A stretch of DNA of 63,961 nt from Guillardia theta CCMP2712. Lineage: Eukaryota; Protista; Cryptophyta. The notes below the pieces were generated by a model. The model worked only from the letters and a program-made list of their open reading frames with translations, was not told the origin of the DNA and ran no database searches. The stretch is taken from the NCBI RefSeq assembly GCF_000315625.1, contig NW_005434654.1:618632-682592 (forward strand), in the 5' to 3' direction. Made by a program: the position numbers and the translations under genes. Of this stretch, positions 1,655 to 25,510 are shown piece after piece. How positions within the stretch are numbered: position 1 is the stretch's first letter; every line of letters starts with the position of its first letter.

Positions 1655-4600
1655 TCAACACACCTTGGGGAGTATGCAGATGGCCTGTCCTTCCACGAGT
1701 CTGTCCGTGCTCGACAGCGACACGTTGACAGCAAGGTCGGGGTTCCAGAAGACCAAGTCGTCGATGGTGACCATGAACTTGGCGGACAGAGACTGGAGGG
1801 TGTCGCTTGCCAGAGCTTTGTAGACTTGCCCGAGCAGGAGCTCTGTTCCGACTCCGGGGAGTGCCGGGTGAACCAGCTGCTCGTTGCCGCTCCAGAGGTT
1901 CAGCCATGTCGTCCGCCACACGTGGGAGATGTCGTAGAGAGACTCGCCCTCCTGCACATCAAAGGTCAACACACCAGCAGCAGGTGCTCATGAGCCTTAC
2001 CTGGATGCAGTACTTGCAGCGGCTGACAGATATGCGCAGGCAGAAGTCGCTTCCTCCCAGCAGCCCGTACCCTCCAGTCGTTGAGATGCCCGAGGAATCT
2101 GTAAGGATGAAGCAGAAGTCGTACTTGAGCGAATCCTGCCCCCTCGCTGGCTTCCACAGCAAGTTTCTCTCCACCGGGTTCGCCCACACCATGTCGGACC
2201 CTAGGAACTCAGCGCCGGGCGGCAGCCCCTGCAAGGTCAGCGAAGTTCCCGCGGCGGAGGTGATGATAGTGAGTTGATGCTTCATCCTCAGCTCGTAGCC
2301 GAGGATCGACGCTTCTGCGGGTGAGATCCCCGCGCTCGTTCCGTCTGCGCCCGCTATGGTCACGGCAAGGCTGCATCCTGCCGTTGCCAGGAACTCTCCC
2401 TTCACATGCGCAGGAAGCGCGCTGGCGAGCGGCAGGGCACCGGCGAGTGGCAGGAAGGAAGGGCTCGGGCTCGCAATGCGGAGGAGGATACAGAGCCTGG
2501 AGGAGGTCAGACCCTGCGAGTCTCGAGCGAGGAAGCAGCTGGTGATCATCTTGCCAGAGTCGCTGACCTTGGGAAGGAAGGAATAGCGGAACAGCACGGG
2601 GTTTGCCCCATGGAGGAGGAGGAGGCTGCCGAGGCAGCCCTCGCTGTTATCCATCACTACCTCTAGAGTCTGGTTGATATCCATGTCCTGCGCTGTCAAG
2701 TTCCTGCTGAAGACGACTCCGATGAAGGCGTCGTAGGTGACGGCAGCATCGAAGGAGGGGATCAGAACAGGCAGGTAGCCCATGTACTGATCGACAGTTG
2801 CTGGCTCGCTGACAAATTGCTCTCCTCCCTCCAGGAGATTCTTCTTCGTCGTGACGGTCACGGAGACCTCGTAAGTCTCTCCGCGTTGCAGCGAGGAAAT
2901 CGTCACGTTGAGCACCTCCCGCCCCACTGTCGTATCGAACAAGACGGTCGCGTCTGCTCGCTTGCACTTGACGTTGTACCCGAGGATCGGCACTCCATCT
3001 CTCGTTCCATCCCCGACATCAATAGGAGGCAGCCAGCTCACGAAGAACAGGTCGTTGCTGACGATGACGACAGCGAGAGAGAAGGGAGGAGCCGGGCGAG
3101 ACACGAGCCTGTAGGAGATCTGAGCGACCGGCATGTCCAGCTTGGAAGGAACATTCTGAGTGAGCAGCTGGATGAAGAGGAAGGCCCCGCGGACCAAGGT
3201 GCTGTTCGGGAAGCTGTACTCACCCGTGCTGGTGAAGGGAGATGTCACGGGAGGAGCGACGATGCTGAGGTAGTTGACAACCACCCTAGAGTTCTCGTCA
3301 GGAGCTGCTGTCCAGCTGAGCTTCATGGTCGGCGGGTTGTTGCAAGGAGCGACACACTCGACTTTGAAGGAGAGAGAGTTTGCGGTGGCCGTGGGGTAGA
3401 TAGTCTGCGTGACTGGACCTGACGGAGAGAACATGTTGCCCGGAGCGGCGAATTGCGATCGCACCTCGAAGGTGTATCCTCGGCCCGAAGTCAAGTTGGT
3501 GATCAAGTAGCTGAGTTTCGTGCCCGGCAAAGAGGACCCAAGTCGATCCTGCGAGACGTAGGAGGACAGAGAGGTGACAAAGGTCAGGGCCGCCATGTCG
3601 ACGTTGTACATTTCACCACAAGTGCGGTTGTCGACGCAGCGCTGGATGACTCGGTAGGAAGGAGGTTGGAGGCCAAGGGAGGGCGAGTACCAGGAGATGA
3701 AAGCAGAACTTTCGTCCACATGCTCGACTGTGAGGTTGGCAGCACTTGCGATAGGAGCTGAGAAAAGCGACAAGGAGTCAGACGAGCAGGCCGGTTGAGT
3801 CGCATACACAGAGCGCGAGCACACACTGATGTTGTAGAGAACCTTTGGGTCTAACGCCGTCAGTGTTGCTGTCGTTGACTGCGATGAGATGGTCATCGAA
3901 GAGATGAAGACTTCTGTGCCGTTGGGGTAGGCGAACGGAGAGTACTCGATGAGGTAGGTCGACGGGGCTGGTCCTGTCGGGGGATTCTGCCATTTCACGA
4001 CAATCTGATAGGCCATCGTTTGCACTACGAGGAAGTCTGCTGGACCTCCGACGTCGATGACAAACGGCTTCGACAGTGCGATGAAGGGATACGAGGAGAC
4101 GGAAGCAACGAGCCTGCTGGAGGAGCAGGGATAGTTGATGCTTGACGTCCACGTGTAGGCTATGGACGAGGATTGCTGCACATCTCCGACTATCACACTT
4201 TGTTGGCAGCTGCTCTGCAACCAGTAGGAAATTTTGGCAGACGGCAAGATCACTCGATTTCCTCCAGCATCCACCAACTTCACGCTCGGGAAGGTCGACA
4301 GCGCTGTTCCTGCTGGTCGCTTGCTGGGGATTCCATCAAAGATCAAAGCAGCTGGCTGTCCAGTGGAGACTGCAAAGGTGGAAGAGGAGACTGAAATGTT
4401 TATAGCAACTCCGTCCTGGTACACGCGAAAGGTGAGGGTGTAGCTACTCGCTTCCTTCATGGTCCTCAGGTCAGTGAATACGACTCTGCCAAGAGTCGCG
4501 ACCAGTGTCGTTGATCCCAACATCTCCACCTGCTGGCTGCCTGTCACGAGAACAGCAGTGACGGTGAACTTGTTCGATCCTAGAACAGCATTTCCTCCTG

Positions 4601-7600
4601 CATCAACCAGCTGTACCGATGGTTGTGCACTGAAAACCACACCAGCTTGCTGCGACACGGCAGGTTGATCTTGCAGCACAAGTGCTGCAGGAGGACCCTC
4701 TGTGACTGTGACGCTCCCAGTTGACGAGCAGCACGAGGTTGAGCAGTCCAACGGGAACCTGACAGACGAGCAGGCGACGCTGACAGGGAGAAGGCGGAAG
4801 AGGATAGGGATCTTCGCCCCTGTCCTTGCGATCACCAAATCTGTGAAGTCCGCCACTCCGTTGAGGGTTGAGATAACCTTGTTTCCTCTGAGCGAGCAGT
4901 TGGTTGGCGTTGTATCGCATTGACAGCAGAAGCCTATCTCCATCTGCACCGACGCCTCGTTCACCCAGTTCCCGCCAGCATCTGTGACTGCAGCCAGCGG
5001 CTGTACGACGAGAGGAACGCCCGCGGAATTGTTGAGCGGGGCCTGAAGGAGGCGAACCTTGCTGGAAGGACCGACGGCAACATTGAAGGGCTTTGAGAGG
5101 ATCGATGTGTTGAACAAGGAGCCGGAGAAAGAGATCTGGTATCCCATGCCAGCCCTGTCGATTGCCATGTTCGTGAAGGCACAGGTTCCGTTCGCACTGA
5201 CGCTGCAGTCGCGATTCCCCAAGAGTTGAGACTGACCTGCTCCTATCAGATCTGCTCGTACAGTCGCTGCCTGCTGCACTCCGACGGCGTTCCCTCCAAA
5301 ATCGACAGCCTGCAGGACTGGCTGGGGGACAAAGGCTGACCCGCCGAGATTGATGGAGCCGGTTTGATCGGGGCCTCGGACCAGCTGAAAGCCGACAGCT
5401 CGTCCGAGCGAGACGTTAAGAAGGAGCGATCTCGACCAGAAGCACGGCTCAAACAGGCCCTGCAAGCAAACAACGACCTTGAGCGGGTACGCACCGACGT
5501 TCTTCTTGATGCTGAGACTCAACGACGATTGTCCGCAAGAATGATTTTTGGGAATTCCTGAGAAGTCAAAATTCTGCACGTCAACAACGCTGGTTGACGC
5601 CATTGGGTCAAAGTAGACCATCTGAGCGAAAGTGACTTGACCGCAGAAAACTTTTGCTGCCGCATCTGTGATGGAAGTGACAACCTCCACGGGATCGCCA
5701 GCCGGAAACCCTGATCGCGAAAGACCCAGATCGACCTGTGAGACATAGTCGGACACGTAGATCTGATTTGACTCGACGTCGAACAGTTTGCTGCACGTCT
5801 GACAAGACTGAGCTGACGCAATGAAAGTGACAGGAGAAGTCGTCGAGGAAGCCCTTGCTGCCTGCAGGTTGACGCTCTTCAGATCTTGCGATGGAAGGAA
5901 GAACAGGGACGTGGTGTCCCCGGTGAACTTGAAGTTTGTGTTGGAGGAGCTCAAGAATAGTTTCACGACCCCTCGGAAGATGTTGACCTGGTTCCCCAGA
6001 CTGTCTTTCAACTGCAACCTTGGAGGCGCGTCCAAGTAGAAGTTCTTCTTGTTGGAGAGGTCTTGAGATGCGTACTTTGCTATGGCTGTGACGGGCGAGG
6101 CAGAGAAAGAAATGCTGGCGGGCACGGATGAAGCATACGCCTCGACGGTGACAGCAGCCGGTGATGCGATGGCGCCTGAGCTTGCGGGAAGGAAGCGGAT
6201 GTGATAGACGCCGGGAGACGAGAAGGACATTCCTACGAAAGACAGCGAACCTTTTTCCATAGGCTGAGCACTGAACGTGAATGGCTTTGAGTTTGCAAGG
6301 ATGTCAACTACGTCAGCATGTATCAAAATGCTGTCGTTCACAGGATTCCCATAGGCATCCGTCAGGTAGAGTTGTGAGCTAAATTCATCATGTTGTACAA
6401 CTCGGGATGGAGGAGGAGTTTGAAAATGTAAGCAGCAGGGCACTTGGGGAAGGACGGTCAAGTTCAAAGTTGGGCTCTGATACAAGATTCCAGAACAAGA
6501 CAGAGTGAAGCGAATGTCATACGTCCCGATGAGAAGAACTCGCAAAGAATTGCACGGAAACTGCCCATCAAGAGAGCTGCATCCCCCTAGGGAATGACTC
6601 TGGGCATCAACCAAAAGTCCACCTCTCCTCACGGTGTAGAACATGGACGAGCACACGGGAGATTGACTCCTTCCCATCGTGTCAATGAACTTCAGGATAG
6701 AGCTGATGTTCAAAGATTCGTTTGCCGCAACTTTCTGTCCGCTCGATTGCAGAACAAGAGACATCGCGTTCTCCTCAGGTAGACCGCAAGGAGCATAACT
6801 TGTAGTGCTTGCAGTGCAGGCAGCAGATGAGAAGGATGAGATGACGGCAAAGGCTCGAGAAGTAGCTGACGTCAACCCCGGACTGCTCAAACGAAGGCGG
6901 AAGAAGGCCCCCGCTACCTTGAAGATGACGTCATCAAAGAAAGCTCTGCCATCATGAACGTTTTGCTGCAAGACACCATCAAGAACGCTGCTGGCACTCT
7001 GAAAGGGAGACAAAGCGAGAGCAGCCGTGACAGTGAAGGATACGTTACTTGGCACAAAGTTCCCACCCTTGTCGTGAGTTGTTACCAGGAATGAAGCAGG
7101 TCGGTTGGCAACGAGGAAGAGGGGCTGCTGAGAGACCTTCAGGTTGTCTGGAGCCCCGATGGAGACGTTGAAGAAGCTGCTGGAGGCTGAAGGAAGTCCA
7201 GCAGAGGCGAAGAGAAGTTTGTACGATGTTGCAGCCTTGTCCACTAGAAGATCTGTAAAGACGATTCGGCCCGCTGCTGCCTTGACACGGTTTCCTGTCA
7301 GCGACGAGAGTGCTGGGCTGAACTCAAGGCCGGACGACGAGGAGTATTGAGCCGCATCAACATCCAAGGAAACAGAAACTGTGTATGCCGTGGAAACCTC
7401 ATTCCCTGCCGCGTCCATGACCTGGAAGAAGGGTGAAGGTGTCACAAAGGAAAAAAGCAAGCTGTTTGAAACTTACCCTGAGGATGGGCTGCCAGGAGAA
7501 GGCAACTCCGGCTTGATTGTCGGATATTGCTGGACTTTGATCAATGACGAGCTGGTGTCCTTGCCCAGGTATGACCGTCAAAAGAAAAAACTTGCTGTAG

Positions 7601-10600: not shown

Positions 10601-13600
10601 CCAGTGTTGACCTGGACAGTGATATTCGTCGAAAGCGCAAGACTAGCACCAGTTGGCATCGAGTCAACTGAAAATGAGAACGAGACAACGTACGGCGATA
10701 TGCATTGTTTGTCAATGGCGAGGTCCGTGAAGTTTGCTATTCCATTGTAGAACAACACAGAAGCATTCCCCAGCAGTTTAGCACTTTGACAGTCTGTTGG
10801 TCGACTGACGATCTCCACAAAGGCCGATCCTCCATTGAACGGGGTGAGAATGTAATTTTCCACATTGAGAAGTGCAAAACTAGGTTGTAAGGGCCATGCC
10901 TTTCCACCATAACAATCAACATGGTTCAGATTGCTGCTGATGCTGTTCACTTCGGATTTCAGTACGAGAAATGTGTCACTTTCAACCGATATCTGAGATC
11001 TGTCACTTTTCGTCGCTTCAAACTTGAGCTTTTGGCTAACGCTGCCAGTGCAGCTCGTACAGTCAAACCTGACAGAACTCCAGCGGGAAACTCCATCAAC
11101 TCCACTCGTTGAGCATCCTGCAGTGAGGGACTCGCAGAGCTTGTCGTTCCAGTAGAACTTCGCGATTGAATTCATGATGTCAACATTATACATTGATACC
11201 TAAAAAGTCAGAATCAGCGGTCTCAAAAATCTCGTTTGCGAGGCAATCATAGGAATTGGAGGAGAAAACACAACTTACCAGGGAGTTGTCATTGGCGACA
11301 ATGTTTCCTCCAATGTCTCGAATAGCCACTATTGGTACTTGCTTGCAAGCAAAGTTGAGCATGCAACCGGAAGGCTGCTGCAAGATGATCAGTTCATTCA
11401 TGACTCCTATCAACACGTCGAAGGTGTTTGTGTACAGCGGATTGATGGAAGGAAGAGACACGACACCTGCATCTGTGCGCACCAGTGAAAGCTTCAAGTA
11501 AAGGTCAAACCCAGTGCCTTGAATCACAAAACCGTTGCAGTCGAATTTCTCTCCAACAAATGTGCTTGTCACGATCGAGAGCGATGAAGTAGTGGATGTC
11601 TTCAATTTGATTTGGCTCAAATTCATCTCCAACGCCAACAGCGTTACTTGTACTCCGTAGTCACCCATGGTGGATATTAGGTTCCCCCCGGCATCGAACA
11701 TCTGGACCGCAGGGTACACTGACGGGTTGACGCCGGAGATGAGCTGTGTGAGATCGAAGAGTCTGGTGGTGTCAAATCGAATCTCCGACGGCTGCCCCAC
11801 TGTGATCTGCAGATTTGTCACTACCGTAAACTTGGAGCTCATCAGACAGTTGATTGAGGACAGGGGGTATGTGCTCTCGTACAGGTAGAAGCTCAGTTGC
11901 TGGGTACCCACTCTAGTGAGGCTCAGGTCTGTGAACTGAGCTGTTCCTAGTTGAAAGATCGCAGTGGTGTTCCCCTTGAGCAAGGTTTGATCCGTGAGGT
12001 TTGCACAGACGTACCCGACGAAGGCAAAGCATCTCTGTCCGCCTGCATCGGAAACCCCGATGAGGGGCTGGACTGCAAGAGGAAGACTGGCAACGGCTGT
12101 CGTAGACTGAGAGACAGAGCTCGCCTGGGCAGGCAACCCTGAGACAGCAAATGAGGTCGACACGACGCTGCGTCTGCATCCTGACTCTGTCGAAAACTTT
12201 ATGACGGCAGACGAGTCCGAGTCGTTGAATCGCAAAGACCGGAAGATAGCCTGTCCATCCGCGAGGGGAACAGCAGAGGTGTCTTGCAAGAGAGACCTAG
12301 AGTTCTGACCGCTGTATTTGGAGGGCACAACATCGATTGTTAGGTCAAAGATCTGATTGTTCGCACGGTCCTGAGCGATGACAATGACAGGCTGATGGAA
12401 AGTTTGCATGACGAAACAGTTGCTGGGCTGCTGAAGCACTGCAAGGTGGTCGAAACCTCCGGGAACAATTGTCAGTGAGAAGATCGTGACATTGCTTGCC
12501 TCATGCCAAGAAAGATACAAAGAGAAGTTGAGAAGATACACTCCAGCTCGTGGAAGGTCTAAGGTAAAGGAAGCTGCCCCAGATAGCAACTGCTGCGAGA
12601 AGGTTTGAGAGAGCACTTCACTGCCACGAGATATGCTCAAGTTGACCCAGGCGGAGGAAAAGTTGGTTGTATGATTGAACTGATCTCGAGCATACACAAC
12701 AAAAGGATCCAATGGCATGTCGTCGCTTGTCCAGAGGGAGTGATGGGGAGCAAGGAGCAGTGATTTAGGTGAATCATGGACGACATCGAAGACGATAGAG
12801 CAGACAGAATTCGAAAGCTTGAACCGGTCAATTACGAGAGTTTTGTCTATTGCCTCGAAACAAACTTTCAGTCGACAACCATAGAAGGTATTGAACGAAT
12901 TGCTCTTGAAGTCGACCACACCTGACCCATTGGATGCTTGAGCGACCTCCAGTGAAGCAAGTGGATCATGGAGGAAGACGCAAGTTGGATCGCTGGCTCC
13001 CATCGCTACAGTCTTCATGAGCATTTCAACTCCAGGAAGAGGCAGAGCGTTTGCATCTGAGAGTTGTAAGGTAAAATCTATCAGTGCCGTGAGTGCAACT
13101 CTCGGTTGCAGAGTAGTCTGCAAATCCATTTTCACCACAGGTCCAAACACTGCAAACCCGTCACTCAGAATTGAATCCAGCCCAAGCGCATCCAACGAGA
13201 ATTGTAAGGAATAGAACAAAGCAGGACGATCAAAGGATATCTTATCGAAGATAGCTTTCCCCTGGTTCAATTGCACCAGGCATGGACATTGAACTCCATT
13301 TAGACGAAGAATACTCGTGTTTGTTGAAGAAGCAGCAATTTGCATTTTCACAGGAAGAAAGGAAAATCCTCCTTGCAGGTTGTTGAATTGAAATCCTCCT
13401 GCATCCTGAAGCTCGACCACAGGTCCTTGAGGACAGGGCATCGCAGATCGACAAAGAGAAGGGGTTCGAGTAATCACAAGTCTTGGGCTGCTTTGGCGGA
13501 AAGACAAGAGGCTTGAGACAAGAGAGGTTAGTATCGATCCCGTCAAATTCATGTAGAAGTGAAGGAATGCAGATACGCCTCCTTCTATATGACTCGTTTT

Positions 13601-16600
13601 GAGGAAAAGGTTGTCAAATCTACACATGCCAGCTGAGCAATTTTTGGAAAAGGATTGGTCCGGATGACAAGCGGTAAGGTTGGGACCTGCAGCTTGATTC
13701 ACAATTTGAAAGCATGAAGATACGGTGTAGGTCCCATAGACACGATTTGAAAACTTGTCTAGTGCTTCGATGACAGGAAAGGGGAGAAGTGGAACTCCGA
13801 GAAACTGACTACCAGCTGGCACTTGCACGAAGTGAAGGGATGCGACAGGACCGGCTGTGATGGAGAAGGAAGGGCTGGACACTGAGGAGGAACCAATTGC
13901 AAAGGAGAGAACGAGACTTTCATGAGCTTGAAAGATAGTGATGTTGGCCAACGAGCAGAGGCCGATCTCACAAGTTGTCGCGCCGCCGTCGAAGGCTGTT
14001 GCTGGCAGAGTGATGGTGCCGTTGCCCTGCGACATTTGGAGAGCCAGCGAGACATCAGCGCGGGAGGTCCATGCCCTGATGCCGTAGTTGTCAGAAAGGA
14101 GGAGGACAGCCTTGGGCTCCAGCACTTGCCCAGCAGTAAAATTCTTGGCGGGAAAGAAGTCAAGGACGAGATGGGCAACGTCGCCATGCACATCGAACTT
14201 GTCTGAAATCACGGAGATGCTGGTGGAGGTCTCCGAGATCTTGAGGCGATACTCCTTGGCAGGCGTGTCGATGGCCAAAGATGAGAAGATTACACAATTA
14301 TTTTCTTGTGTTGTTGCTGTTGATCCATGCAGAGAAGCAAGATTGAGGTACACAAGCGTCGCAGCAAAATTGTTCGACGCCTGTATGATCGCATCGTTTC
14401 CACCTGCATCTTTGGCGCAAGCCGTGACAGGTTGTGAAAAACTGACACCAGCGTGCACATGAGTAGGCTGTTGAAGGAGAAACAAACTTGCGATGGAACC
14501 ATTCACAACTTGAAACGGATCAGACCATACGGATATGTCCATGTAAGTGAACAGAAGACGATACCCCCGTCCTACTCTGTCGATGGCGAGGTTTGTGAAC
14601 GTCACGACGTTTGAGTAAAAGAGCACCTTCGTGCTGCCCCTGAGCATTGAGACTCTTCCATTCGAATCTACAAGCGATGCGGTCACAAATCCGTTTCCTG
14701 CCAAGATCTTCCCGTCCAGCTGTTGGGCAACGAGTTGCGGCTGCTGATGGAATGGCAGACCGCCGCTCTCATTGCTCGGTTGGCTCTGCAGTATCAGTGA
14801 GGGCGAGTTCTGCATGATGTAAATCGGCTGCGAGTTGACAGAGAGAAATGGTTCGCTGGCATTGTCAGCTAGTGATATGAGAAACTGCAACGAACAAAAC
14901 CCTGACTCCGCGAAGATAGAGATGTTGGAGAAAACAGCCCTGCCTTGTTGTGCTCTCACTGTCGTCTCAAGTGCTGACGGGCTACCAAGCCCCTTGCAGG
15001 TCGACGAGGACACGAGGCGGGCAGTGACGAGATGGCTGGAGGCGAGGACTGTGCTGGACGCGGACGATGAGACGATTCGCAATGTCGGTTGCCTCCTGAG
15101 CATCTGCCCGTTGACCGCGAGAGCCGGAGGGACTTCAATCTCAAGAGCGCTGATGCTCGAGACCACCACGTTGCTCTGAACGGTAGAGAAGACCGTCGAC
15201 CCCCAGAGAGCGTTGGCAGAGAAGACGAGCGCGTAGGTCCCGTTGACCGCGATCCTCAAGTCCGTGAAGGTTGCCACTCCTGCCTGCGCTTTCACACTTG
15301 TTTGACCACCTAGAAGAGAGGAGGAGGCGCCACTGATGGCGACAGAGATGAAACATCCTGCCGAGTTGCAGCTGTCCCCATCAAAGTCAGTCACTACTCC
15401 CCCGCTGGTGTCAACGGCGGCGATCTGAGGCTGCGGCTGCAAGAGGCCGTTCATCTGCAATATGCTACCCAACGTAACGACCTTGGAGACGATGGTGGCA
15501 ATGGGGCCCGAGACTATCTCTACCGGGGTTGAGGATACTGCGAATCCCGAGGAAGAGAAGAGCAAGACAAAAAAAGCGCTGCTTCCTGACACAGGAGTGA
15601 TGCTGAGGTCGGTGAAGGATGCTGTGCCGTTGATAAACGCTGCTGTCGTATGTCCGTTGAGCACTCCCTTGTCTTCTGTCGACTTCGATAACTTCACATC
15701 AAGAGCCCCGACGAAGCTTAAAACTACATTACTGAACGCGTCGAGAATCGCAACAACCGGTTGTTTCCCGGGAGCGATGCCACGGAGACTCGAGTCCATC
15801 TCGGAGACTACTACTAAGTTGGAGGCTCTTCCAGCGATGACCTCGAACGGGCGCGAGAAATTCACAATCGGATTCCCATAACCAACAGGGGTGAACACGA
15901 ATTTCAACGAGAGCTTGGAGGAAGCGAGCTTGATGGAGAGATCGGTGAAGTAGACGACATCCTTGTGCACGTCCAGCTGTTTGGTTCCCTCCAGAGCAGA
16001 CGAAGCCTTCCCGTCGACGTAAAGAGAGACGAGGACTGACCCTTTGATACAGTCGCACGAGATGCGCGAGTCATCGTTGTCACGGAAAAGCACTTGAGGC
16101 TGACCCAGCCAAGGTGCTCCTGCGATGCGATCGATCGCGGTGATCTGGATCTCAAGGTTGCTCACCGTCCCTGTCACTATGAAGGATGAGGAAAGAGCAG
16201 GCTGGAGGTTTTCGGCAACGAAGACAAGAGAGAAGCCGCTCCCCGCGAGATTCACGCTCAGGTCAGTGAAGTCAGCCAAGTTCTCCTGCATCTGCACTGA
16301 CGTGTTGCCGTCTAGTCGAGCGGTGGGCAAGAGGACGTTGCTGAGAGACACATTGACAAGCAGCCCAGTTCGTATGATGGAATTGCCCCCGGCATCCACC
16401 GCGATGATCTGAGGGGCAGGGACAATAGTTTTGCCGATCATCGTGTCCCTCGGTTGTGAGAGCAGTCTGAGGCAACACGGCTGACCTTGCAGAACCAGAA
16501 ACTCACTTGGAGGGGAAAGAGCTCGGTTGATAGACAAGAACATCAGATATCGCCCTACTTGATTCACTGTTACGTTCACTTGGAAAACGCCGTTGGAAGG

Positions 16601-19600
16601 ATTCAGATTGTTGACCACGCGTGACACATTCGTCGCGTTGTAGTCTGAGCTGAGAGGTACAAGAGTGATGGTGAGATTGCAGGGCTGTGTCAGAGAGTTG
16701 TTGGCGACATCTGACGCGCGGAAGTAAAGCTGGTGGGGCTGAGCTGAGACAAGAGCGGGAGGAAGGCGTCGCACGAAGGAGATGGTCTGGACGAATCCGA
16801 GTAGAACTTTGACAGCATTTGATGTCACTGAAACGGATGGATGCGACGGCAAAGCCGAGGAGAGCAAAGTGAACCGCAGCATGAAAGTCTCATCCACTGA
16901 GACATTCTGTATTTGCAGGTTGGTGAATGTTGCGTATCCTTGATGTGTTTGCACGATCGTGTCACCTCCCAGAACTGCGAAGCTGGAGTTGGAGGCGATC
17001 AAATCAACACTGACCTGTGCATTCGCGACAACAGCAAGGTTGCTATACCCATCATTGACTCCAAGACAGGGTTGAACAGAGAAGACTGTGTCAGCAGCGA
17101 CGGTCAGGGGTTGTGTGACGAGCTGCAGGGATCGGGCAGGGCCGTTGGTCACATTCAGTATGCTGACATAGACCGGAGGGATGGTTGTTGAGGTGCCAGG
17201 GATCTCAAACTTGAGAGTGTACGGCCCGCCGGTCGTACTGAGAAACAAGTCGGTGAAGTTCGAAACTCCAGCGTTGAATTGTGTCGACAAAGTTCCCTGA
17301 AGGCCAGCGATAATGCTGTTGTCATAGATAAGAGAGACCTTGACTGCGCTGCTCGAACCGTAGACTATCCGCCCGAGGCTATCGAGGGCTTGGAGGAGGG
17401 GAGGGGGATTGATGACCTCACCAGCCATCACCAGACTGTAGCTGGGCGGAGAGAGAATGGAGATCTGGGAGACTGCATATGTGATGCTGAAGAAAGGCGA
17501 CATCACTCGGAAGCAGCTTGTCTTATACTGACATTTGAAGAGAATTTGCTTCCCGCTGATTTGGCTGTCGGTCGGAAAGCTCACTCTGATATCTGAGAAG
17601 TTTGCAATCCCGAAAGCTCCTCTCACACTGAAGATCCCGTTGCTGAAGACAAGATTTCCGACAGCGGAGGCCGTGCAGTCAAGGCTCTCAATCACCGGAA
17701 TGTGATTGTAAGTCTCGTCGAGCAGGCGAAGCTCCACTGCCGGGGAGAAGCTCGCGTCTGCGATCGCTCCTGCTGGAAACCTGTAGAGGGAGAGTGCCAC
17801 TGCCGATCCGTAGAGGCGGAAGGGGGAGCTCACCTTGTACAGCGAGAGAGTTCCGTCCTGCGATGAGCAGGAGAAGTTGAGAGCGAAGCCGAATCCAGCT
17901 GAGTCGATTCTGATGTCTGTGAAGCTCGCTATTCCGTTGCTCGTCAGCTTCCTCAAGGTGCCAGAGAGAAGAGCAGAGTTGCCGTTGGTCAGGGAGATCG
18001 CGCAGCTGAACGTGCTGGACACCGCGTTCAGCCCCTGGTCGACGACCTTCACCGACACGCTTTGCTGGAAGACTTTGAAGCCGAATGAGTCGACTGGCCC
18101 CTGGACCACTACCAGAGCGGTAGGAGTCCCTTGCTGCACCGTCAGGACCTGCTTCACGGACAGCCCGTCCGTCGAGAAGAGCAGAACTCGAGCGCTGGAA
18201 GCGAGGGAGAGCTGGAGGTCTGTGAAGAAGGCTCTACCTCTCTGGAAGGCGATGCTGGTAGTTCCCAGCAGTGGGTCTGCAATTGTGTCGTTGGCCTGGA
18301 CACGAGCGTATCTGCTGTAGGACAGGACGGTGGAACCGAACTGGTCGAACACAGCCAGAGCTGGTTGAGTGCCGAAGGGTCTGCCGCCTGCTGCGTTCTC
18401 AGCGATGGAAATCAGCCTCAGCTCTGCAACGCTGCCCGTTACGACGATGGGGGGAGAGGAAGTGCGAACTATAAAGCTGCTGGAGACGTTCCAGTAAAGA
18501 AACTCAATCCTGAAGCTGGTGTCTAAGGTGGTGATCTGCAGGTCGAAGAAAGAGATCATCCCTTGGGCCGCTGCCACCTGCGTCACTCCGACGAGGTTCG
18601 AGTCCGCTGAGCTTCCGCTGAGCTTTCGGGCTAGGACGTCACCACCGAAATCCGTTACGAGATTTCCTCCTGCATCCCTTGCGCTCAGCGTCGCTCCTGG
18701 GCTGAGGGGAACAAGAGCGACGGCACTGGTCGCGACGGTCTCGACGTGCAGCGATGCGATCACGCCGAACGACACGGAGAAACTGTTGGAAACTCCAGAG
18801 ACGTTGAAGGAGCTCGCGTATGACAAGATTGCCATGTCCTGACCGATAGTGGATAAGTTGAAAGCCAATATCGCTTGACCGCTGATGAGCTGAATCACTC
18901 CAAGCATATGCACCTGCTTGTTGTCATCCACAAGCGAAAAAGAGGCATTCGAGTTGAAACCCAGGACGATGCTCGAGCATACGTCCACCACCATCAGCTC
19001 CATCATCATTTGCTCTCCGACTCTTGAGACTGCCGGAGAGACGAGCAGCTGAATGGAGCTGGGACGTCCAAACCAGACGGCAAAAGTCTGCGATCTGATG
19101 TTGATCTTCGAGACATTGCAGGAGAACACGAACTGAAAACTCTCTCCCACATTCCCGACGATCAGGTTGGTGAAGTCAGCGACCCCATTTCTCGCCAGGA
19201 CGATAGTCGTGCCCTGTATGCTCAACAGCTTCCCGTCTGTCACAGACAGCATCTCGACAGCAACTCCGTCTTGACTTGCTCTCACTGTGTTGCCGTAAAC
19301 ATCCATCAGTGTTACAAGCACATCGAAAACTTGACCACACTGAAGGTTAGAGGCAGGGAGAGTCACGAGAGCTGAAGATACCAAGCCTGATACGTCAAAG
19401 AGCTGAGAGGATGCAGTGAGTTGCGCGATAATACCATTCCCTGTTTGAATTTGTGCCGTGAACAGCAATTGATAGCCCTTTCCAGCATTGTTGAGAGAGA
19501 TGCTCGCAAATTTTGCTTGCCCATTGACAAAGTTCTCCAGGCAAGGAAAGGAGCCGGAGCACATGAGAGTTGCTCCTGTGGGATTTGATTGGAGGATCGC

Positions 19601-21445
19601 AGAGCATGAGAAGCTGCTGATTCCGTCCATGATTGTGTTGCCGAACCTGTCATGCAGCTCCACCAGCGGAGCAGGTTGCAACGCACTTCCGACCACTCCG
19701 GCGAAGGGTTGACGAGCAATGAAGAGCTCGAAGATTGCAGCAGGAAACACCTCAAATGATGACGAAACGTTGGAGATGTTTCCAATAGTCAACACCAACT
19801 CATACCTTCCTGCGATCTCCAGGTGCAGGTTTGCAATCTCTACAAATCCCTGATCGGCATATTGAGCTTGAGAGATGTTGGAAGTAAAGACGGCAGAAGG
19901 CAGACTATTAGCGATGCTGCCAACTGACTGGATATAGGTCAAGATTGTCACGCCCTGAACGATAACATTCGAAAAACGATCCAGAAGACGAATGCGAGGG
20001 TTAAGATAGGAAAATTCTCCTGCTGTCCAGTTAACAGCAGGTTGACGTACCACCTCGATAGAGGCTGCTTGGCCTGGTATCACATCAAAACTGTTTGCCG
20101 TAGTCACTGAGATTGCGCCGGACTGGAACCGAACTTTATATCCAACACCTGCTCTTCCAATCGACAAGTCTGTGAACCTGACAACTCCTTTGACAAATTG
20201 CAATCTGCTGGAACCGGACATTGCTTGCAGAGCTTGTGTCTGACCATCAAGTGCCCAGGCTTCTACAATCAGTTGACTGGACTCAACTACTGACCCACGC
20301 TGGTCGGTGACAACAATAGATGGCTGAACCTCGAAGGGCACAAGAGAGGCATATGTCTTAATGTTTGGAAAGCTGTTTGAAATCGTTAAAAACTGTTCAC
20401 TTCCGGTCACGACAAGACCGCTGTAAGTCACTGCGAAAGAGATGTTTCCGATGCTGGTGTTGAAGACCACGTCGTAGACAGAAACGATGCTGACAAAGAT
20501 CCCAGAGAAGACAGCGACTCCTTGATCGCTGAAACGATAGTTCAGCCCATTTCTGCTGAAGATAGCCACACCGTCTCCACGAGCCCCTTTGGAAACAGTA
20601 ATCTGCATCCGAAGAGGAATGATGTTTCCACCAGCATCACGCGTTGAAATTGTAGGACTTGGATTGAAGTCACTGTTCGCTATTGCTTGCTGAGGAAACA
20701 CATCGATAGAGAGGTAAGACAGTTGGCCAGGTATAACATCAAAGAATGATATAGAAGTTGCTAATATTCCATGAGGAATACATGAAGATATTGTACAGGT
20801 TTGTTCTAGTTGAAATCGCAGAGAGTAGGAGGCCCCGACTTGCAATATTTTCAAGGAGTCAAAGACGGCTTCGCCGTAAGACATGATCTGCACCGTCTGA
20901 CCTACCAGGTCGCACCTTGCTCGACATCCCATCAGTTGTACACTGACAGGAATCCCACTGGCCGTGGTCACGGTCTTGAAGCTAGGGTCTTTGAGAGCGA
21001 CCGAAATGGGCCCGAAGGACTTGCCGCCGAACAAAGTCTCGTTGACGGAGATGATCTGACACAAGTGAGAAGAGCCGGGTATCAGGCTTGTGAGCCCATT
21101 GCTGGACAGCAGAGGGTTCGACCCCGTGCATTGTGCGGCTGACCGACAGGCAGCCCCTGTATTTGTGGGCAAACAATTCCCGCATTGCGTGTCCAAGCAC
21201 CCTGTCATGCAGCCTGCTCCCGGCGTGACACAGGCTGTGCCGTAACAAGTGGAGCCATCACAGAATGGTGAGCCCCCAGCGCATGACCCTTGCAGCTCAA
21301 AGGGGAGGGAAGTCACCACAAGCTGCGTTCCGTATTGCGTCTGCGAGCACAGAGCAAGAGGAGCGATGGTCATCAAAGATATGAAGGAGCATCTCACAAG
21401 GAGCAATGTCCACTTGTTCGACTTCATGAGCGCCTTGTGCAGCAT
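1655..21445 (-). CDS. Giant secreted or surface protein (~6,535 aa): signal/anchor, Cys-rich cap, dozens of bacterial-type Ig-like modules, FN3-like domains, two C-terminal LysM domains
   Basis: Exons 21445-11279, 11199-7477, 7421-2001 and 1951-1655 are joined by phase-0 GTAAG..AG introns at 11278-11200 (79 bp), 7476-7422 (55 bp) and 2000-1952 (49 bp), giving DNSL|VSMY, PILR|VMDAAGN and KYCIQ|EGESLYDIS. A ~110-aa module recurs: QP..aG..f..QP.v...D.gGN......L.G.......G.a.FTDL.I...G..Y.L.F. FN3-like motifs: VKWQNPP, ISWYSP..NLTSGRGYTFEVRS, VSWLPP..LQRGETYEVSV. LysM-like motifs: YCIQEGESLYDISHVWRTTWLNLWSGN and YKALASDTLQSLSAKFMVTIDDLVFWNPDL..LVEGQAICI. Confidence 0.85.
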
Positions 21446-21580
21446 CTATCATCGCATGCCCCCGCGCCCTCGCCGTGTCTTGGCGCGCATTTTCTTTCCT
21501 TGACAGCTCTGGTCACCCTCATCAACTGACGAACAATCTGGCCCTCATCTCCTCTCTGACCATCCCGGCCGGCACTGGCC

Positions 21581-24500
21581 CACGGGGGTAGAACTACTAT
21601 GTTCGAATTGACAGGCGGGCCAACCCCTGGTCGGTGAATTAAACAGTACAAATAATTAGTTAAATACCCCCCCCCCCCCGCTTCGCCTCCATGCGGTCTG
21701 TGTGGGGCGCTATGGCAGTTTTTTCAGGGGGTTCTGCATGCCATGGCAGGGTATCACAACAAAATTCAAATCCGATTTTTGGCGGGCAAACCTGTGACCC
21801 CCCTCGCCATGGGCAAGCCGAAGGTGCGGAAGACCGAAACATGCCAATCATGCCAAAAACCAAGAAAGAAGGCCAGTGTTCGAAGATGGCAAGGTGTGCC
21901 TGTTTGCACAACTTGTGTACATTTATTCAAAACCCAAAAGGATGAGTGTGGTTCTAAGCGGATTTTGCTCTCGAAGTGGGATGATACCTTGGTTTTCAAG
22001 CTGTTGGATTTCTTGCAATGTCAAGATCATGCAACTTTGTCTTTGGAGTGTGAAGACAACAATCTTCTCACTTCAGCGACCCAGCATCTGAAGTTAAGTC
22101 TTCGTTCTGTATCCTTGTTTGAAGTCCAAAAGAAGCTAAAAGTCCTTGGAGATGTTTACGGACATACATCAGAAGGGTTTGCGAAATGCTTTCTCTACTA
22201 TTACACCAAGGTTTTCGAAAAACAAGCATCTGGAAATCCACATGCAGGAACCACTGCTATTTATGAGCATTTAAATCGACTTCGTACACAGCTTGGTAAT
22301 ATGCACAGAAAGCATCGAACTCTTTTTTCCCGAATCGAAAAGTGGTCTACCTCACATTTCGAAGATTTGAATTCATTACAATCCACGATTCACGATTACT
22401 TTTTGCGGTAAGTCTGTGATGTTGCTTTCTTCCCCTCTCTGTAGTGTGATCATTCTGCAGATATGCAAAATTGTCGGATGAGCATGTTGATCCATGTCCC
22501 CCAAAGAAGCACACCAAGGCAGACTCCGAGCTGTTCATTCAGACAGTTTGTGAAACGTTCAGAACCCTTGATGGCAACACCCGATGTGAAATCATCCGAA
22601 GGATTCTGAGTGAGCACGACTCTCTGTGTCAAGCACAAAAGAAAACATCGGAGCATGAGTTCTCTGCGATATGCAATGTCGAAAGAGCAGTTTCAAACTT
22701 ACATGCTTGTGGATTGCCAGATGTAGTTTCTGAATTGGTGATGTTTGCCAGTAATGATATCGACGCTTTCAGAACAACACACAAAATCATGCCGTACTTG
22801 GTAATGGATTGGTGTCGTCAAAGTTTTAGAGCGAAAGATTCGAGGGGCATGAGATTCTCCCCGGAGATTATCAGTTTCGCATCAACACTCAAAAACCTTG
22901 GCAATGCGACAATGTTGCGGTTCCTGTCAGGGCCAGGGAACAAGTTTACAGACAATTTCCATTCTGATCAGGCTTTACATAACTTGCCTCTGCCATGCAT
23001 CTCTACTCTTTGCAAGCATCAAAGTGCTGACATGAAAACACGAGATGTGAAAAGGTCAAGAATATGTAGCGAAATTTTGGACAATTACAGCGAAATGATG
23101 AGTACTAACCTTGTAGATGGTATCCACGTGTTGGCGATGGACAAGACGATGATCAATGCTGGTTTTTGTAAAGAATTCGAAGATTGCGAAGCAGATTTAG
23201 GCAACCAGTATGGATGATCGAACTCTATGTTCCTCTATTGCTGCATACATTTCAGGGCTATTCAAGTTCGAGCCTCCAATTTCAGAGCACGACATTGAGA
23301 GTGAGTGCACCTTGAACAATGCCGATGAATACGATGGGGAAGACCTGTCGTCATTGTCAGTCACACCTCAGTCGGGAATGGTACACATGGATGTGCCGGA
23401 GATGAGAGATATCAAAAATTTTGTTTTGCAATTGCGACGCAACCAGGCCATATGGCAGGTTCAGAATGAGAAGACGCTAAGATGTAGCACGAGCAAGAGG
23501 CCAAGATTGACCTTGAAAGACATGTTCTGTAGGCTGAAAATATTTTGCCGAAGGTATGGATACGAAGAAGTTCTGTCATTAGCCAATGACAATCAAGATG
23601 AGGAAGAAACATACACTCCATGGGAGATGGAGCGAAGGATAGCAGATGGGCTAAATGAGCTGGATGAAAACAAGATCCGCTTTAAATTTGACGAATGGCT
23701 GTCCAATCCCGTCATCTCTCCTATCACCAAGAAGTTGTTATTCTTCTCACCGTGCATTAACCACTTGTTGAAGAATGTCAGGCATTCGATTGGATCAGGG
23801 AAGTCACAATCGTCTTCACCGGAAGCCAAGATATGGCATAAAGCTTACAGTGATATCGCCAAGAAGAATCCATCATGGATGTCTCAGATGGAGGTCGATG
23901 GAACCGCCGATCCACAATCTGTGGATATCATGCTGAAGATGTTCAGTGAAAAAGCCATCAGTCTACTGAAGGCAGAAGGGCATGAAGCGACAGCCAGAAT
24001 GGCAGAAAGTATGTCTGGCCTTCACAAAGCATTCGATCAAAGAGGTCTGACAGTTTCAGAGAGGATACGTCTAGTACGCGAAGCTCGGAGTTGGTTGTTG
24101 GAAGGGATCGACTGGACCACGGTCAGCCAGAAACACGTGAAAGGATTATCTTCTGTCGCGTTTGAAGGTTTCATAGTGGCAATTGATACTCATCTGCAAG
24201 TACAGCAGTACGTGAAAAATAAGAGACATGTGCTTGGAGACGGAGACTATGACTTCAACTCACGAACTCTCTGCACCGATAGTGTGGAGAATCTGTGGTC
24301 ATTGATTGGCCATCTGAACAAGAAGGATTTCTTGAGAAAATTCAATCAGGCTTGCACAGAGTTATGTAAAAAGGTGGACCCTGACCTGCCCTTTGTGTAC
24401 GAGCATTCGAAAAAACGAATTGTCCTCAGCCAACCGCATGAACGGGACACTTTCAACGTACGGAATGGATCAGATAATGACGGGGAAGCTGAGAACAGCA

Positions 24501-24894
24501 CACATAAGAACAGGCGAAGACGAATTTATGCTAAATCAGCACAATGGGATGGAGGCCTCAATGGTAACATGCCCGGGTTTCGGGGATTACGTGACATTGC
24601 TGGTTGCAAGTCGAAAAAGAGGTATACGAAAAGTAGAAAACATTAAAAAGAGCGATAGTGACATCCGAATCATTGGTATCATGAGATAGAACTCACATTT
24701 CTCTGATAGACTGTGAGGTTTTGACAATTGTCATCATCGCGCTTTTTGCTTTAATCATCCTTAAACCTGGTCGCGGCCTGGCTGCCATTGCGATTTCCTG
24801 CAAACTTACCCACCCCCTCCCCATCAACATACCCTCTATCATTGAGGGAAAGACACCGGTCCTAGACCCTTTTATCGCGAGTTCCACCCCCGTG
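21581..24894 (+). mobile_element. Complete cut-and-paste DNA transposon, P-element-like, 3,314 bp
   Basis: TIRs CACGGGGGTAGAACT (21581-21595) and AGTTCCACCCCCGTG (24880-24894) match at 14/15 with CA..TG termini. Perfect flanking direct repeat GCACTGGCC at 21572-21580 and 24895-24903. The interior is AT-richer and encodes a transposase. Confidence 0.9.
21743..24646 (+). CDS. P-element/THAP9-like DDE transposase (~900-920 aa, spliced)
   Basis: Intron 22408-22460 (GTAAGT..CTGCAG) joins the 222-aa and 248-aa ORFs in frame. The join to the 478-aa ORF needs a second intron (candidate 23168-23255) or a frameshift. Motifs resembling P transposases: HVLAMDKTMI (first D), RIADG (second D), FFSPCINHLLKNVRH (DxxHL.K..RN position), DPQSVDIMLKMFS, HKAFD, RTLCTDSVENLWSLI (QD..EN.F equivalent). 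Confidence 0.75.
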
Positions 24895-24962
24895 GCACTG
24901 GCCTCAGCCCGGCCCCTGTCCGAGTGGGCCTGCCTGTGCGATCGGACTGCCAGGAGTGTCAG

Positions 24963-25006
24963 GGTCAAGCCTCCTCGACTCTCCTGATTGTCCTCGTACT
25001 GATTTT
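24963..25006 (-). repeat. Dispersed non-coding motif, copy 1
   Basis: The reverse complement reads AAATCAGTACGAGGACAATCAGGAGAGTCGAGGAGGCTTGACC and matches 60878-60920 and 39670-39691. Confidence 0.8.
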
Positions 25007-25510
25007 TGTCCGCCGCCGGCCCATGACGTGACAGTGATGCCCCCCGTGACGGTGTCCCGCAGGGGTAGCCCACCGGGCTGCCGGCAGGGGTCACCCCTGT
25101 GCATAAAACTCTCGGAGTTACGGCACCACGCCGCTGGGTCGCGGCGCGGCCGGGCCCGGGGCCCCGGCGGCCGCCGAACTTGACTAGTATCACTGATGCG
25201 ATCCGAGTCACTGACGCATGGAGACTACCGGTCTAAAAGCAGTCATGTGCACCCCTACATCGTCCTGGGAGGTGATGGAAACCAGGCACAAGATGCACGG
25301 GGTCGGGAGGGTGAGGGGAGAAGCGGTTAAGCCTCTGAACACTCAGCAGCAGCACGTGATTGCAAGTGTCTAGCGCACCTTGGAGCTGAGTGCGCAGCTA
25401 CAAGATCGTGGCACATCATTCTTTATCCTGAAGTTGCTGGAGGGCTTCAGATTCGCTGTCGTCTGTGATCCCTGCCTTGTGACATAAAGGATCTTTCTTG
25501 CTCCACTCCC

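What the first reader, a model, noticed from the sequence alone, without database searches (positions are those of the whole stretch)
21572..24903. Intact-looking DNA transposon mixing P-element and Mutator/hAT traits: CA..TG TIRs, 9-bp TSD, CxxH
Seen: 15-bp TIRs, a perfect 9-bp TSD (GCACTGGCC; an 8-bp reading does not work on both sides) and a transposase with P-like motifs. Established: P-superfamily elements typically make 7-8-bp TSDs and carry DxxH after the second catalytic Asp, whereas 9-bp TSDs typify Mutator-like elements and CxxH typifies Mutator and hAT transposases. Here the motif is CINHLLKNVRH. Inference: a divergent, possibly unclassified lineage, recently inserted because the TSD is perfect.
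Basis: partly seen in the sequence, partly recalled or inferred. Interest (0 to 1): 0.8.

Follow-up and report, generated by a model that had tools for sequence, protein, structure and literature searches.

The report
Broken copy of P-like transposon
This is a real and recently mobile DNA transposon in the alga Guillardia theta, but the window copy is an internally deleted, non-autonomous copy, and its family is a very divergent branch of the P-element/THAP9 kind, not a P/Mutator/hAT hybrid.

Summary
The termini are as described. The TIRs are 15 bp (14/15 match, CACGGGGGT..) at 21581-21595 and 24880-24894, flanked by a perfect 9-bp TSD, GCACTGGCC. CINHLLKNVRH is encoded at 23753-23785.

The copy is not intact. 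It lacks 722 bp that a 4,036-bp copy elsewhere in the genome (C86) has. The loss shifts the frame and removes the second catalytic Asp. An identical 3,314-bp copy with a different 9-bp TSD sits on another contig, so the deleted form has itself moved.

The genome (Guillardia theta, 87 Mb) holds three subfamilies with the same terminal 15 bp. All five cleanly bounded copies have 9-bp TSDs.

The full transposase is about 1,190 aa and has no Pfam hit. Its modelled catalytic core matches the Drosophila P-element transposase at Z 22.8, against 8.4 or less for RAG1, Transib and Hermes. Language-model features, predicted-structure neighbours and distant homologues also point to TNP-like/THAP9 proteins.

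C versus D in the xxH motif switches within this clade. A 9-bp TSD is already published for a Drosophila P element. So the "mixed traits" are known variation.

New here: a cryptophyte P-like lineage with a Cys4-type N-terminus in place of THAP and two large insertions in the catalytic domain. No earlier scan note covers it.

The parts
21572..21580 (.). Left copy of the 9-bp target-site duplication, GCACTGGCC.
   Evidence: Exact match to 24895-24903 (0 mismatches at 9 bp, 6 at 8 bp).
21581..21595 (+). Left terminal inverted repeat, CACGGGGGTAGAACT.
   Evidence: I2: 15 nt, 93%. The same end occurs in the copies on C172, C83, C3 and C7.
21687..21742 (+). Likely 5' UTR. RNA-type contigs begin at 21687-21700, about 106 bp inside the element.
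   Evidence: table 8 (X10 record 9, X6 record 16). These runs have no depth over the single-copy left flank.
21743..22407 (+). Exon 1 (221 codons plus 2 nt). N-terminal region with a C-x2-C...C-x2-C zinc-ribbon-like motif (CQSC..CTTC). It is not a THAP domain.
   Evidence: ORF. No Pfam THAP hit. The four Cys are conserved in subfamily B.
22408..22460 (+). 53-nt GT..AG intron.
   Evidence: table 5. The joint 22406/22460 (cut +1) appears in the RNA-type contigs X6 and X10 and not in the DNA run X1.
22461..23217 (+). Exon 2 up to the premature stop. It holds the conserved N-terminal region and the first-Asp block HVLAMDKTMINAGF..EADLG. The spliced product is a truncated 473-aa protein ending ..ADLGNQYG*.
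   Evidence: The D1 block is conserved in distant homologues.
23200..23202 (.). Junction of the 722-bp internal deletion (GGC microhomology). It removes ORF residues 245-485 of the full-length protein and shifts the frame. The lost part includes the coiled-coil insertion, two beta strands and the second catalytic Asp.
   Evidence: Alignment with the full-length copy L031. Breakpoint script.
23210..24646 (+). Out-of-frame remainder of the transposase gene. It contains beta-5 plus CINHLLKNVRH (23753-23785), a P-type GBD-like all-alpha insertion domain, and the Glu helix TDSVENLW (24278-24292).
   Evidence: ORF. Motif coordinates. Fold evidence.
24880..24894 (-). Right terminal inverted repeat, AGTTCCACCCCCGTG on the + strand.
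   Evidence: The 15 bp are identical in subfamily C, and homology between copies ends exactly here.
24895..24903 (.). Right copy of the 9-bp target-site duplication, GCACTGGCC.

Best explanation
Window 21581-24894 is a non-autonomous, internally deleted copy of a cut-and-paste DNA transposon family of Guillardia theta.

The autonomous form is 4,036 bp (contig C86). It encodes a two-exon protein of about 1,190 aa. This is a DDE transposase belonging to a deep, poorly annotated branch of the P-element/THAP9 (TNP-like) group.

Inferred mechanism:
1. Transposase made from a full-length copy binds the conserved CAC..GTG 15-bp ends.
2. It excises the element using an RNase H-type active site. The inferred triad is D449, D681 and E1072 of the spliced protein (ORF residues 224, 456 and 847), with C894-x-x-H897 in place of the P-element D-x-x-H.
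3. It joins the ends to target DNA across a 9-bp stagger. Repair of that stagger gives the 9-bp TSD.

The window copy lost 722 bp, probably by microhomology-mediated repair. It can therefore encode only a truncated 473-aa N-terminal protein. It was nevertheless mobilised in trans after the deletion, landing 135 bp upstream of the start codon of the giant ORF 11186-21445 (minus strand).

Shown: the termini, TSDs, deletion, second identical copy, splicing and transcription, and a modelled P-type fold.
Inferred: catalysis, which residue is the first Asp, trans-mobilisation, and any cofactor requirement.
For: Termini and TSD.

Family:
- At least 70 matching pieces in the 87-Mb genome.
- Three subfamilies at about 100%, 81% and 53-60% amino-acid identity.
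- The same terminal 15 bp in all three.

TSDs: perfect 9 bp in 5 of 5 cleanly bounded copies, on C20, C172, C83, C7 and C3. A sixth on C19 is probably 9 bp.

Deletion and mobility:
- 722 bp, with GGC microhomology.
- The window and C172 copies differ at 0 of 3,314 bases but have different TSDs.
- The window copy differs from C86 at 4 bases.

Expression:
- The 53-nt GT..AG intron is spliced in RNA-type contigs and not in DNA.
- MMETSP transcripts also exist.

P-like nature of the transposase:
- The domain model (pLDDT 79, pTM 0.81) was aligned to 48,161 PDB representatives. It matches P-element transposase 6p5a at Z 22.8, rmsd 3.1 A, 280 residues. The next hits are RAG1 8.4, RAG-like (BbRAGL, 6b40) 8.0, Transib 7.6 and Hermes 7.1.
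- Foldseek on the full model also ranks 6pe2/6p5a first, and the VIA second look gives Z 15.7.
- The ESM-atlas feature search gives TNP-like clusters, best score 0.94 with 190 shared features. The atlas structure search gives mainly THAP9 and P-transposase clusters at TM about 0.5.
- The profile search found 130 homologues with collinear D..D and C/DxxH..E blocks. Five of 41 distant ones hit Pfam TNP-like_RNaseH_N.
- The family profile ranks 6p5a first among PDB sequences. It aligns the DxxH block to FSDTPHLIKLVRN (E 0.056).
Against: - No Pfam TNP-like, THAP or Tnp_P_element hit for the G. theta protein itself, even at E<=1.
- The sequence-level link to a solved P transposase is weak (E 0.056).
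- There is no THAP domain.
- The first Asp (D449) lies in a part of the model with pLDDT below 50. It is assigned only from motif conservation. D633 (AQDG) is an alternative.
- No phylogeny against hAT, MULE, Kolobok or Dada reference sets could be built.
- To my knowledge no MULE or Kolobok transposase structure is solved, so the fold search cannot rank them.
- No excision footprint or empty site was seen.
- The only full-length subfamily-A copy (C86) has an aberrant left junction: CAT instead of CAC, and only 7 bp of flank identity.
Confidence: 0.8

Rival explanations
1. The clade is a separate, undescribed superfamily. It would comprise the G. theta family, metagenomic protist proteins and the animal proteins with a YqaJ domain. 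It would share only an ancient common fold with P, and would not be a branch within the P superfamily.
For: - No Pfam TNP-like hit for the G. theta proteins.
- Only 14% identity to 6p5a over the aligned core.
- Different N-terminal DNA-binding module, with no THAP.
- Two large insertions in the RNase H fold, at ORF residues about 250-395 and 490-660.
- 9-bp TSD.
- Relatives carry other modules (YqaJ, HhH). The coordinates suggest these lie within or near the same insertion points, but this was not checked.
Against: - Z 22.8 to 6p5a, including the GBD-like insertion domain. This is far above the 8.4 or less seen for other DDE superfamilies.
- Some clade members do pass the Pfam TNP-like_RNaseH_N threshold (P0017, 25.8 bits against a cutoff of 24.6).
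- The nearest predicted-structure and feature clusters are almost all TNP-like/THAP9.
- Superfamily rank is partly a matter of convention.
Confidence: 0.15
2. It is a Mutator-like element (MULE). The 9-bp TSD and the CxxH motif would reflect true Mutator ancestry.
For: The 9-bp TSD and CxxH are both typical of MULEs (established knowledge; PMC9587614).
Against: - No MULE, Transposase_mut, SWIM or FAR1 Pfam hit in the G. theta proteins or in 41 relatives.
- Relatives carry DxxH and TNP-like hits.
- Fold, feature and atlas searches all return P/THAP9.
- The TIRs are 15 bp, not long MULE-type TIRs.
- A 9-bp TSD also occurs in a bona fide P element (PMC3698922).
Confidence: 0.03
3. The window copy is an intact autonomous element. 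The breaks between its reading frames would be introns.
For: Long ORFs lie on one strand between good TIRs. One real intron does exist.
Against: - The second break coincides exactly with a 722-bp segment present in C86 and in subfamilies B and C as continuous ORF.
- No splice joint was reported there.
- The missing segment holds the invariant SFDGEF Asp.
Confidence: 0.02

Closest known systems
Drosophila P-element transposase / THAP9 (P superfamily; PDB 6p5a, 6pe2)
   Same: - RNase H-type core followed by an all-alpha insertion domain, then the Glu helix (Z 22.8, 280 residues).
- An xxHL[LI]K..R motif after beta-5: CINHLLKNVRH here, DTPHLIKLVRN in P.
- TIRs that start with CA.
- Internal-deletion derivatives that are mobilised in trans.
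- An intron in the transposase gene.
   Different: - C instead of D in the xxH motif.
- 9-bp rather than 8-bp TSD.
- 15-bp rather than 31-bp TIR.
- No THAP domain; a C-x2-C..C-x2-C motif instead.
- A coiled-coil insertion of about 145 aa after the first-Asp block, and an insertion of about 170 aa between the second Asp and CxxH.
- No Pfam TNP-like hit.
- The host is a cryptophyte.
- GTP dependence is unknown.
Divergent P element of Drosophila buzzatii and its MITE BuT5 (PMC3698922)
   Same: A P-superfamily element whose copies carry 9-bp TSDs. The autonomous copy has CTAGTAGGT, and 13 of 17 BuT5 copies have 9 bp. It also has short non-autonomous partners.
   Different: An insect element with a canonical P-family transposase. 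Its TSD varies between 8 and 9 bp and its TIRs are 3 bp. In G. theta every clean copy has 9 bp and the transposase is far more divergent.
Mutator-like elements (MuDR/MULE)
   Same: 9-bp TSD, and CxxH between the second Asp and the Glu.
   Different: No MULE or SWIM domains, a P-type fold and P-type relatives, and short TIRs.
KP and other internally deleted P elements; Ac/Ds-type autonomous and non-autonomous pairs
   Same: An internally deleted copy keeps both ends and the N-terminal coding part, and is moved by transposase supplied in trans.
   Different: Whether the 473-aa truncated product represses transposition, as KP does, has not been tested.

Membership tests
P superfamily (P element / THAP9 / TNP-like) | RNase H-type DDE core of P topology, with an all-alpha (GBD-type) insertion before the catalytic Glu. 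| tested here: met
   The domain model matches 6p5a at Z 22.8, rmsd 3.1 A, 280 aligned residues. The next superfamily scores 8.4 or less.
P superfamily (P element / THAP9 / TNP-like) | Match to the Pfam TNP-like models (PF21787, PF21788, PF21789) or Tnp_P_element (PF12017). | tested here: not met
   No hit at E<=1 for any G. theta piece. Only 5 of 41 distant clade members hit PF21787, best E 1.4e-5.
P superfamily (P element / THAP9 / TNP-like) | D-x-x-H motif after beta-5. | tested here: not met
   The motif is C-I-N-H. The His is invariant across the clade. C and D alternate: C in G. theta, P0012, P0016, P0018 and P0020; D in P0019 and the animal relatives.
P superfamily (P element / THAP9 / TNP-like) | N-terminal THAP (C2CH) DNA-binding domain. 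| tested here: not met
   No PF05485 hit. Exon 1 has C-x2-C-x18-C-x2-C, conserved in subfamily B.
P superfamily (P element / THAP9 / TNP-like) | 7-8-bp TSD. | tested here: not met
   9 bp in 5 of 5 clean copies. There is a published 9-bp precedent inside the superfamily (PMC3698922).
P superfamily (P element / THAP9 / TNP-like) | GTP as cofactor. | not testable with these tools
   A GBD-like domain is modelled, but nucleotide binding needs biochemistry.
Mutator / MULE | MULE transposase domain (PF10551 / PF00872), often with a SWIM finger. | tested here: not met
   No hit in the G. theta proteins or in 41 relatives.
Mutator / MULE | 9-bp (8-11-bp) TSD and a CxxH motif. | tested here: met
   Neither feature is exclusive to MULEs.
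Mutator / MULE | MULE-type catalytic fold. | not testable with these tools
   No MULE transposase appeared among the PDB matches. To my knowledge none is solved.
hAT | 8-bp TSD, hAT C-terminal dimerisation domain (PF05699), Hermes-like fold. | tested here: not met
   The TSD is 9 bp. No Pfam hit. Hermes 8edg scores Z 7.1 against 22.8 for P.
Kolobok | TTAA-specific 4-bp TSD and 5'-RR..YY-3' termini (PMC9587614). | tested here: not met
   The TSDs are 9 bp and varied, with no TTAA. The termini are CA..TG.
Transib / RAG1 | 5-bp TSD and a Transib/RAG1 core fold. | tested here: not met
   The TSD is 9 bp. Transib scores Z 7.6 and RAG1 8.4, against 22.8 for P.

The most novel reading that the evidence does not exclude
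The G. theta family, its CxxH-bearing protist and metagenome relatives, and the large animal group whose homologous proteins also carry a YqaJ nuclease domain may together form an undescribed superfamily-rank lineage sister to P/THAP9.

Its features would be a 9-bp TSD, CAC..GTG ends, a non-THAP zinc-ribbon N-terminus, and an RNase H fold that tolerates whole modules (coiled coil, HhH, possibly YqaJ) inserted between its strands.
Probability: 0.25. Interest if true: 0.6.

Novelty: new variant of a known kind. Interest (0 to 1): 0.45.

Why it matters
- It extends the P-element/THAP9 type of transposase to a cryptophyte alga, in a form that standard domain models miss completely.
- It shows that TSD length (9 against 8 bp), the C/D of the xxH motif and the DNA-binding module can all change while the P-type catalytic architecture is kept.
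- It cautions against classifying transposons from single motifs or from TSD length.
- The family looks active: identical copies, intact ORFs in two or three subfamilies, and spliced transcripts. It could therefore become a genetic tool for cryptophytes, which have few.
- The clade it belongs to, including animal proteins with a YqaJ nuclease domain, appears not to be described in the literature I could search.

Tried and rejected
Sequence searches that gave nothing useful:
- Pfam on the window ORFs, the full-length ORF and the N-terminal parts of relatives gave no relevant family.
- phmmer of the full ORF against PDB sequences gave nothing.
- The word-indexed protein search returned only G. 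theta proteins and MMETSP transcripts, both with the single protein and with the family alignment. It gave no bridge to canonical P proteins.

DNA access:
- More genomic DNA for TSD tabulation could not be fetched.

Tests of the TSD in relatives:
- The metagenome contig L067 (P0016) has a 20-bp CAC..GTG inverted repeat at 445-464 and 5706-5725. The flanks, TGTTGAATC and AAGGTGACG, do not match, and there is only one copy, so this is inconclusive.
- Two loci of an animal YqaJ-clade protein (L068, L069) are collinear for more than 14 kb and look like haplotigs. They gave no element boundaries.

Reads and literature:
- Read laying showed no joint across the whole element, so there is no evidence of an empty site or of excision.
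- Searches for Guillardia transposons, YqaJ-bearing transposases or this family found no description.

Readings rejected:
- I first took D633 (AQDG) as the first catalytic Asp. I dropped this because the P-element alignment starts at P residue 248-250, after its D230. An upstream hhhhD(K/E)..DLGG block is conserved in distant homologues.
- I rejected the Mutator, hAT, Kolobok and Transib readings (see the membership tests).
Full report
**What is in the window**

The element runs from 21581 to 24894 (3,314 bp). It begins CACGGGGGTAGAACT and ends AGTTCCACCCCCGTG, a 14/15 inverted repeat that the repeat tool also reports (pair I2). GCACTGGCC lies directly outside both ends, at 21572-21580 and 24895-24903. 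A shift to 8 bp gives 6 mismatches. CINHLLKNVRH is encoded at 23753-23785. The element has 44.9% G+C against 51-52% in its flanks.

**The copy is not intact**

A search of the window's own genome (87 Mb, 669 contigs) with the element found at least 70 matching pieces. Many copies carry about 720 extra bases at element position 1622.

The copy on contig C86 (L031:501-4536, 4,036 bp) differs from the window copy at only four bases, plus a 722-bp segment that the window lacks. The junction, window 23200-23202, shows 3-bp GGC microhomology.

In C86 the second exon is one continuous 965-codon ORF. In the window the deletion shifts the frame, so translation stops at 23215-23217.

The only true intron is 22408-22460 (53 nt, GT..AG). 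RNA-type contigs of two runs skip it, and a DNA run does not. The spliced full-length product is 1,190 aa. The window copy can give only a 473-aa N-terminal fragment.

**Mobility and age**

A second 3,314-bp copy on contig C172 is identical at every base. It is flanked by GGCAGGCGG rather than GCACTGGCC. So the deleted form transposed after the deletion arose, and did so recently.

A different deletion derivative sits on C83 with TSD CCTTGGCAT. Two subfamily-B copies have CGAATCCAA (C7) and CCGACCCCC (C3). That makes five perfect 9-bp TSDs in five cleanly bounded copies.

Three other copies are less clear:
- A sixth copy (C19) fits ATGAGGGGG if its eroded left end is allowed for.
- A copy on C11 has no TSD.
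- The full-length C86 copy has CAT instead of CAC at its left tip and only 7 matching flank bases.

In a 2021 DNA run, depth over the element is 4-18 times that of the single-copy flank. One contig crosses the left junction, and no read skips the whole element.

**The family**

The word-indexed protein search matched only Guillardia theta CCMP2712 hypothetical proteins and MMETSP transcripts. This identifies the organism and shows transcription.

A six-frame search of the genome separates three subfamilies:
- A: the window's own subfamily.
- B: about 81% amino-acid identity.
- C: about 53-60% identity, with four near-identical copies carrying an open 972-codon frame.

All three end in the same 15 bases. 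In subfamily C, homology between copies stops exactly at ..CCCCGTG.

**What the transposase is**

Pfam finds nothing at E<=1. A profile of the three subfamilies, run against 1.84 billion representative proteins, found 130 homologues. Many share two collinear blocks:
- ..VLVxxLSDxD..PVAY..SFDGQ, which holds the second Asp. That Asp is invariant.
- W.S.PE..(C/D)xxHLL.N.R..., running through to ..E.FF. The His is invariant.

The nearest non-Guillardia proteins come from metagenomes. They also have Cys in the motif (PCWVH), and one has Asp (DWSH). The more distant ones have Asp. Some of these come from animal genomes, for example the snail Batillaria. Seventeen of 41 carry a YqaJ nuclease domain and five hit Pfam TNP-like_RNaseH_N.

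Four lines of evidence tie the G. theta protein to the P-element transposase:
- An AlphaFold model of ORF residues 395-885 (pLDDT 79, pTM 0.81) was aligned to 48,161 PDB representatives. It matches the Drosophila P-element transposase 6p5a at Z 22.8 (rmsd 3.1 A, 280 residues). RAG1 follows at 8.4, a RAG-like transposase (BbRAGL, 6b40) at 8.0, Transib at 7.6, Hermes (hAT) at 7.1 and Tn5 at 5.9.
- The full-length model gave the same first hit by Foldseek and by VIA second look (Z 15.7).
- ESM-atlas feature and structure searches return mostly TNP-like, THAP9 or P-transposase clusters.
- The family profile ranks 6p5a first among all PDB sequences. It aligns its DxxH block to FSDTPHLIKLVRN, but only at E 0.056.

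**Catalytic residues (inferred)**

Strand 452-455 followed by D456 (SFDGEF) superposes on the region of P-element D303. Strand 663-668 is followed by C669-x-x-H672. E847 (TDSVENLW) lies on the helix after the all-alpha insertion domain.

The P alignment starts at P residue 248-250, after its first Asp. So the first Asp should lie upstream. The block HVLAMD(224)KTMINAGF..EADLGG is conserved in distant homologues, for example LSMDGKKITIGF..EEDLGG in P0075. I take D224 as the first Asp, with moderate confidence. The conserved D408 (AQDG) is the alternative.

In spliced-protein numbering the triad is D449, D681 and E1072, with C894 and H897.

Between the D1 block and the next strand lies a coiled coil of about 145 residues. 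A further 170 or so residues lie between the second Asp and CxxH.

The window deletion removes ORF residues 245-485. This takes out the coiled coil, D408 and D456.

**The "mixed traits"**

[quoted passage not shown] Here it switches between C and D inside one clade.

A 9-bp TSD is already documented in the P superfamily. The D. buzzatii P element is flanked by a 9-bp TSD, and 13 of 17 copies of its MITE BuT5 have 9 bp (PMC3698922).

None of the Mutator, hAT, Kolobok or Transib defining features that I could test is met, apart from the non-exclusive TSD length and the Cys (see the membership tests). The element is best read as a very divergent P-like lineage, not a hybrid.

**What is unusual**

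- The host is a cryptophyte.
- Pfam does not detect the protein at all.
- There is no THAP domain. A C-x2-C..C-x2-C motif takes its place, conserved in subfamily B. A similarly spaced pair of Cys motifs occurs in a metagenome relative.
- Two large insertions sit inside the RNase H fold.
- The TSD is consistently 9 bp.

I found no paper on the family. I could not consult Repbase or Dfam.

**Limits**

- No reference sets were available for a cross-superfamily phylogeny.
- The first-Asp region is poorly modelled.
- Attempts to read TSDs in relatives outside G. theta were inconclusive.

Noticed in passing
window 24955-25007: A 53-bp unit (AGTGTCAGGGTCAAGCC...) lies 52 bp to the right of the transposon's TSD. 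The first-pass search found at least 521 candidates in the genome. Thirty-eight of the 42 listed matches are 100% identical and lie on many contigs and both strands. Depth in the DNA run is about 61,700 against 63 for single-copy flank. RNA-type contigs break at its edges.
   Followed up: partly
window 24330/24386 and 24488/24697: RNA reads and contigs show joints whose skipped parts begin CT and end AC. These would be GT..AG introns on the minus strand, inside the conserved sense coding region. This suggests spliced antisense transcripts over the 3' third of the family. The raw RNA reads there are only 95-99% alike, so they come from a diverged copy.
   Followed up: partly
window 21446-21571 (and ORF 11186-21445, minus strand): The element sits 135 bp upstream of the ATG of a giant 3,419-codon ORF. 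An earlier scan note reads this as part of a protein of about 6,535 aa that resembles an adhesin. This is a promoter-proximal position like those favoured by Drosophila P elements. The effect on that gene is unknown.
   Followed up: no
P0017, P0028, P0038 and others (distant homologues, some from animal genomes): Seventeen of 41 distant homologues carry a YqaJ-like nuclease domain. From the coordinates it appears to lie between the first-Asp block and the rest of the RNase H fold, where G. theta has a coiled coil. I found no paper describing a transposase of this design.
   Followed up: partly
P0012, P0016, P0018 (metagenome relatives): The nearest non-Guillardia relatives hit Pfam HHH_3, a ComEA-like helix-hairpin-helix module (P0018 only weakly), between the second Asp and CxxH where both blocks are present. 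One source annotates them as 'DNA uptake protein ComE-like'.
   Followed up: no
L067:415-464 and 5706-5760 (metagenome contig encoding P0016): A 20-bp CAC..GTG inverted repeat bounds a 5.3-kb unit with no matching TSD. A further 9-bp inverted pair, TTTGGCGGG and CCCGCCAAA, lies exactly 17 bp outside each end.
   Followed up: partly
L031:480-540 and 4520-4560 (G000 contig C86): The only full-length subfamily-A copy starts CATGGGGG instead of CACGGGGG. It shares only ATGAGGG (7 bp) between its flanks, inside a locally repeated GATGAGGGTGCT target. A subfamily-B copy on C19 is also flanked by ATGAGGG(GG).
   Followed up: partly
window 21669-21680: A poly-C tract in the element's 5' untranslated part varies in length between copies (it is longer in C83). 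DNA contigs break there.
   Followed up: no
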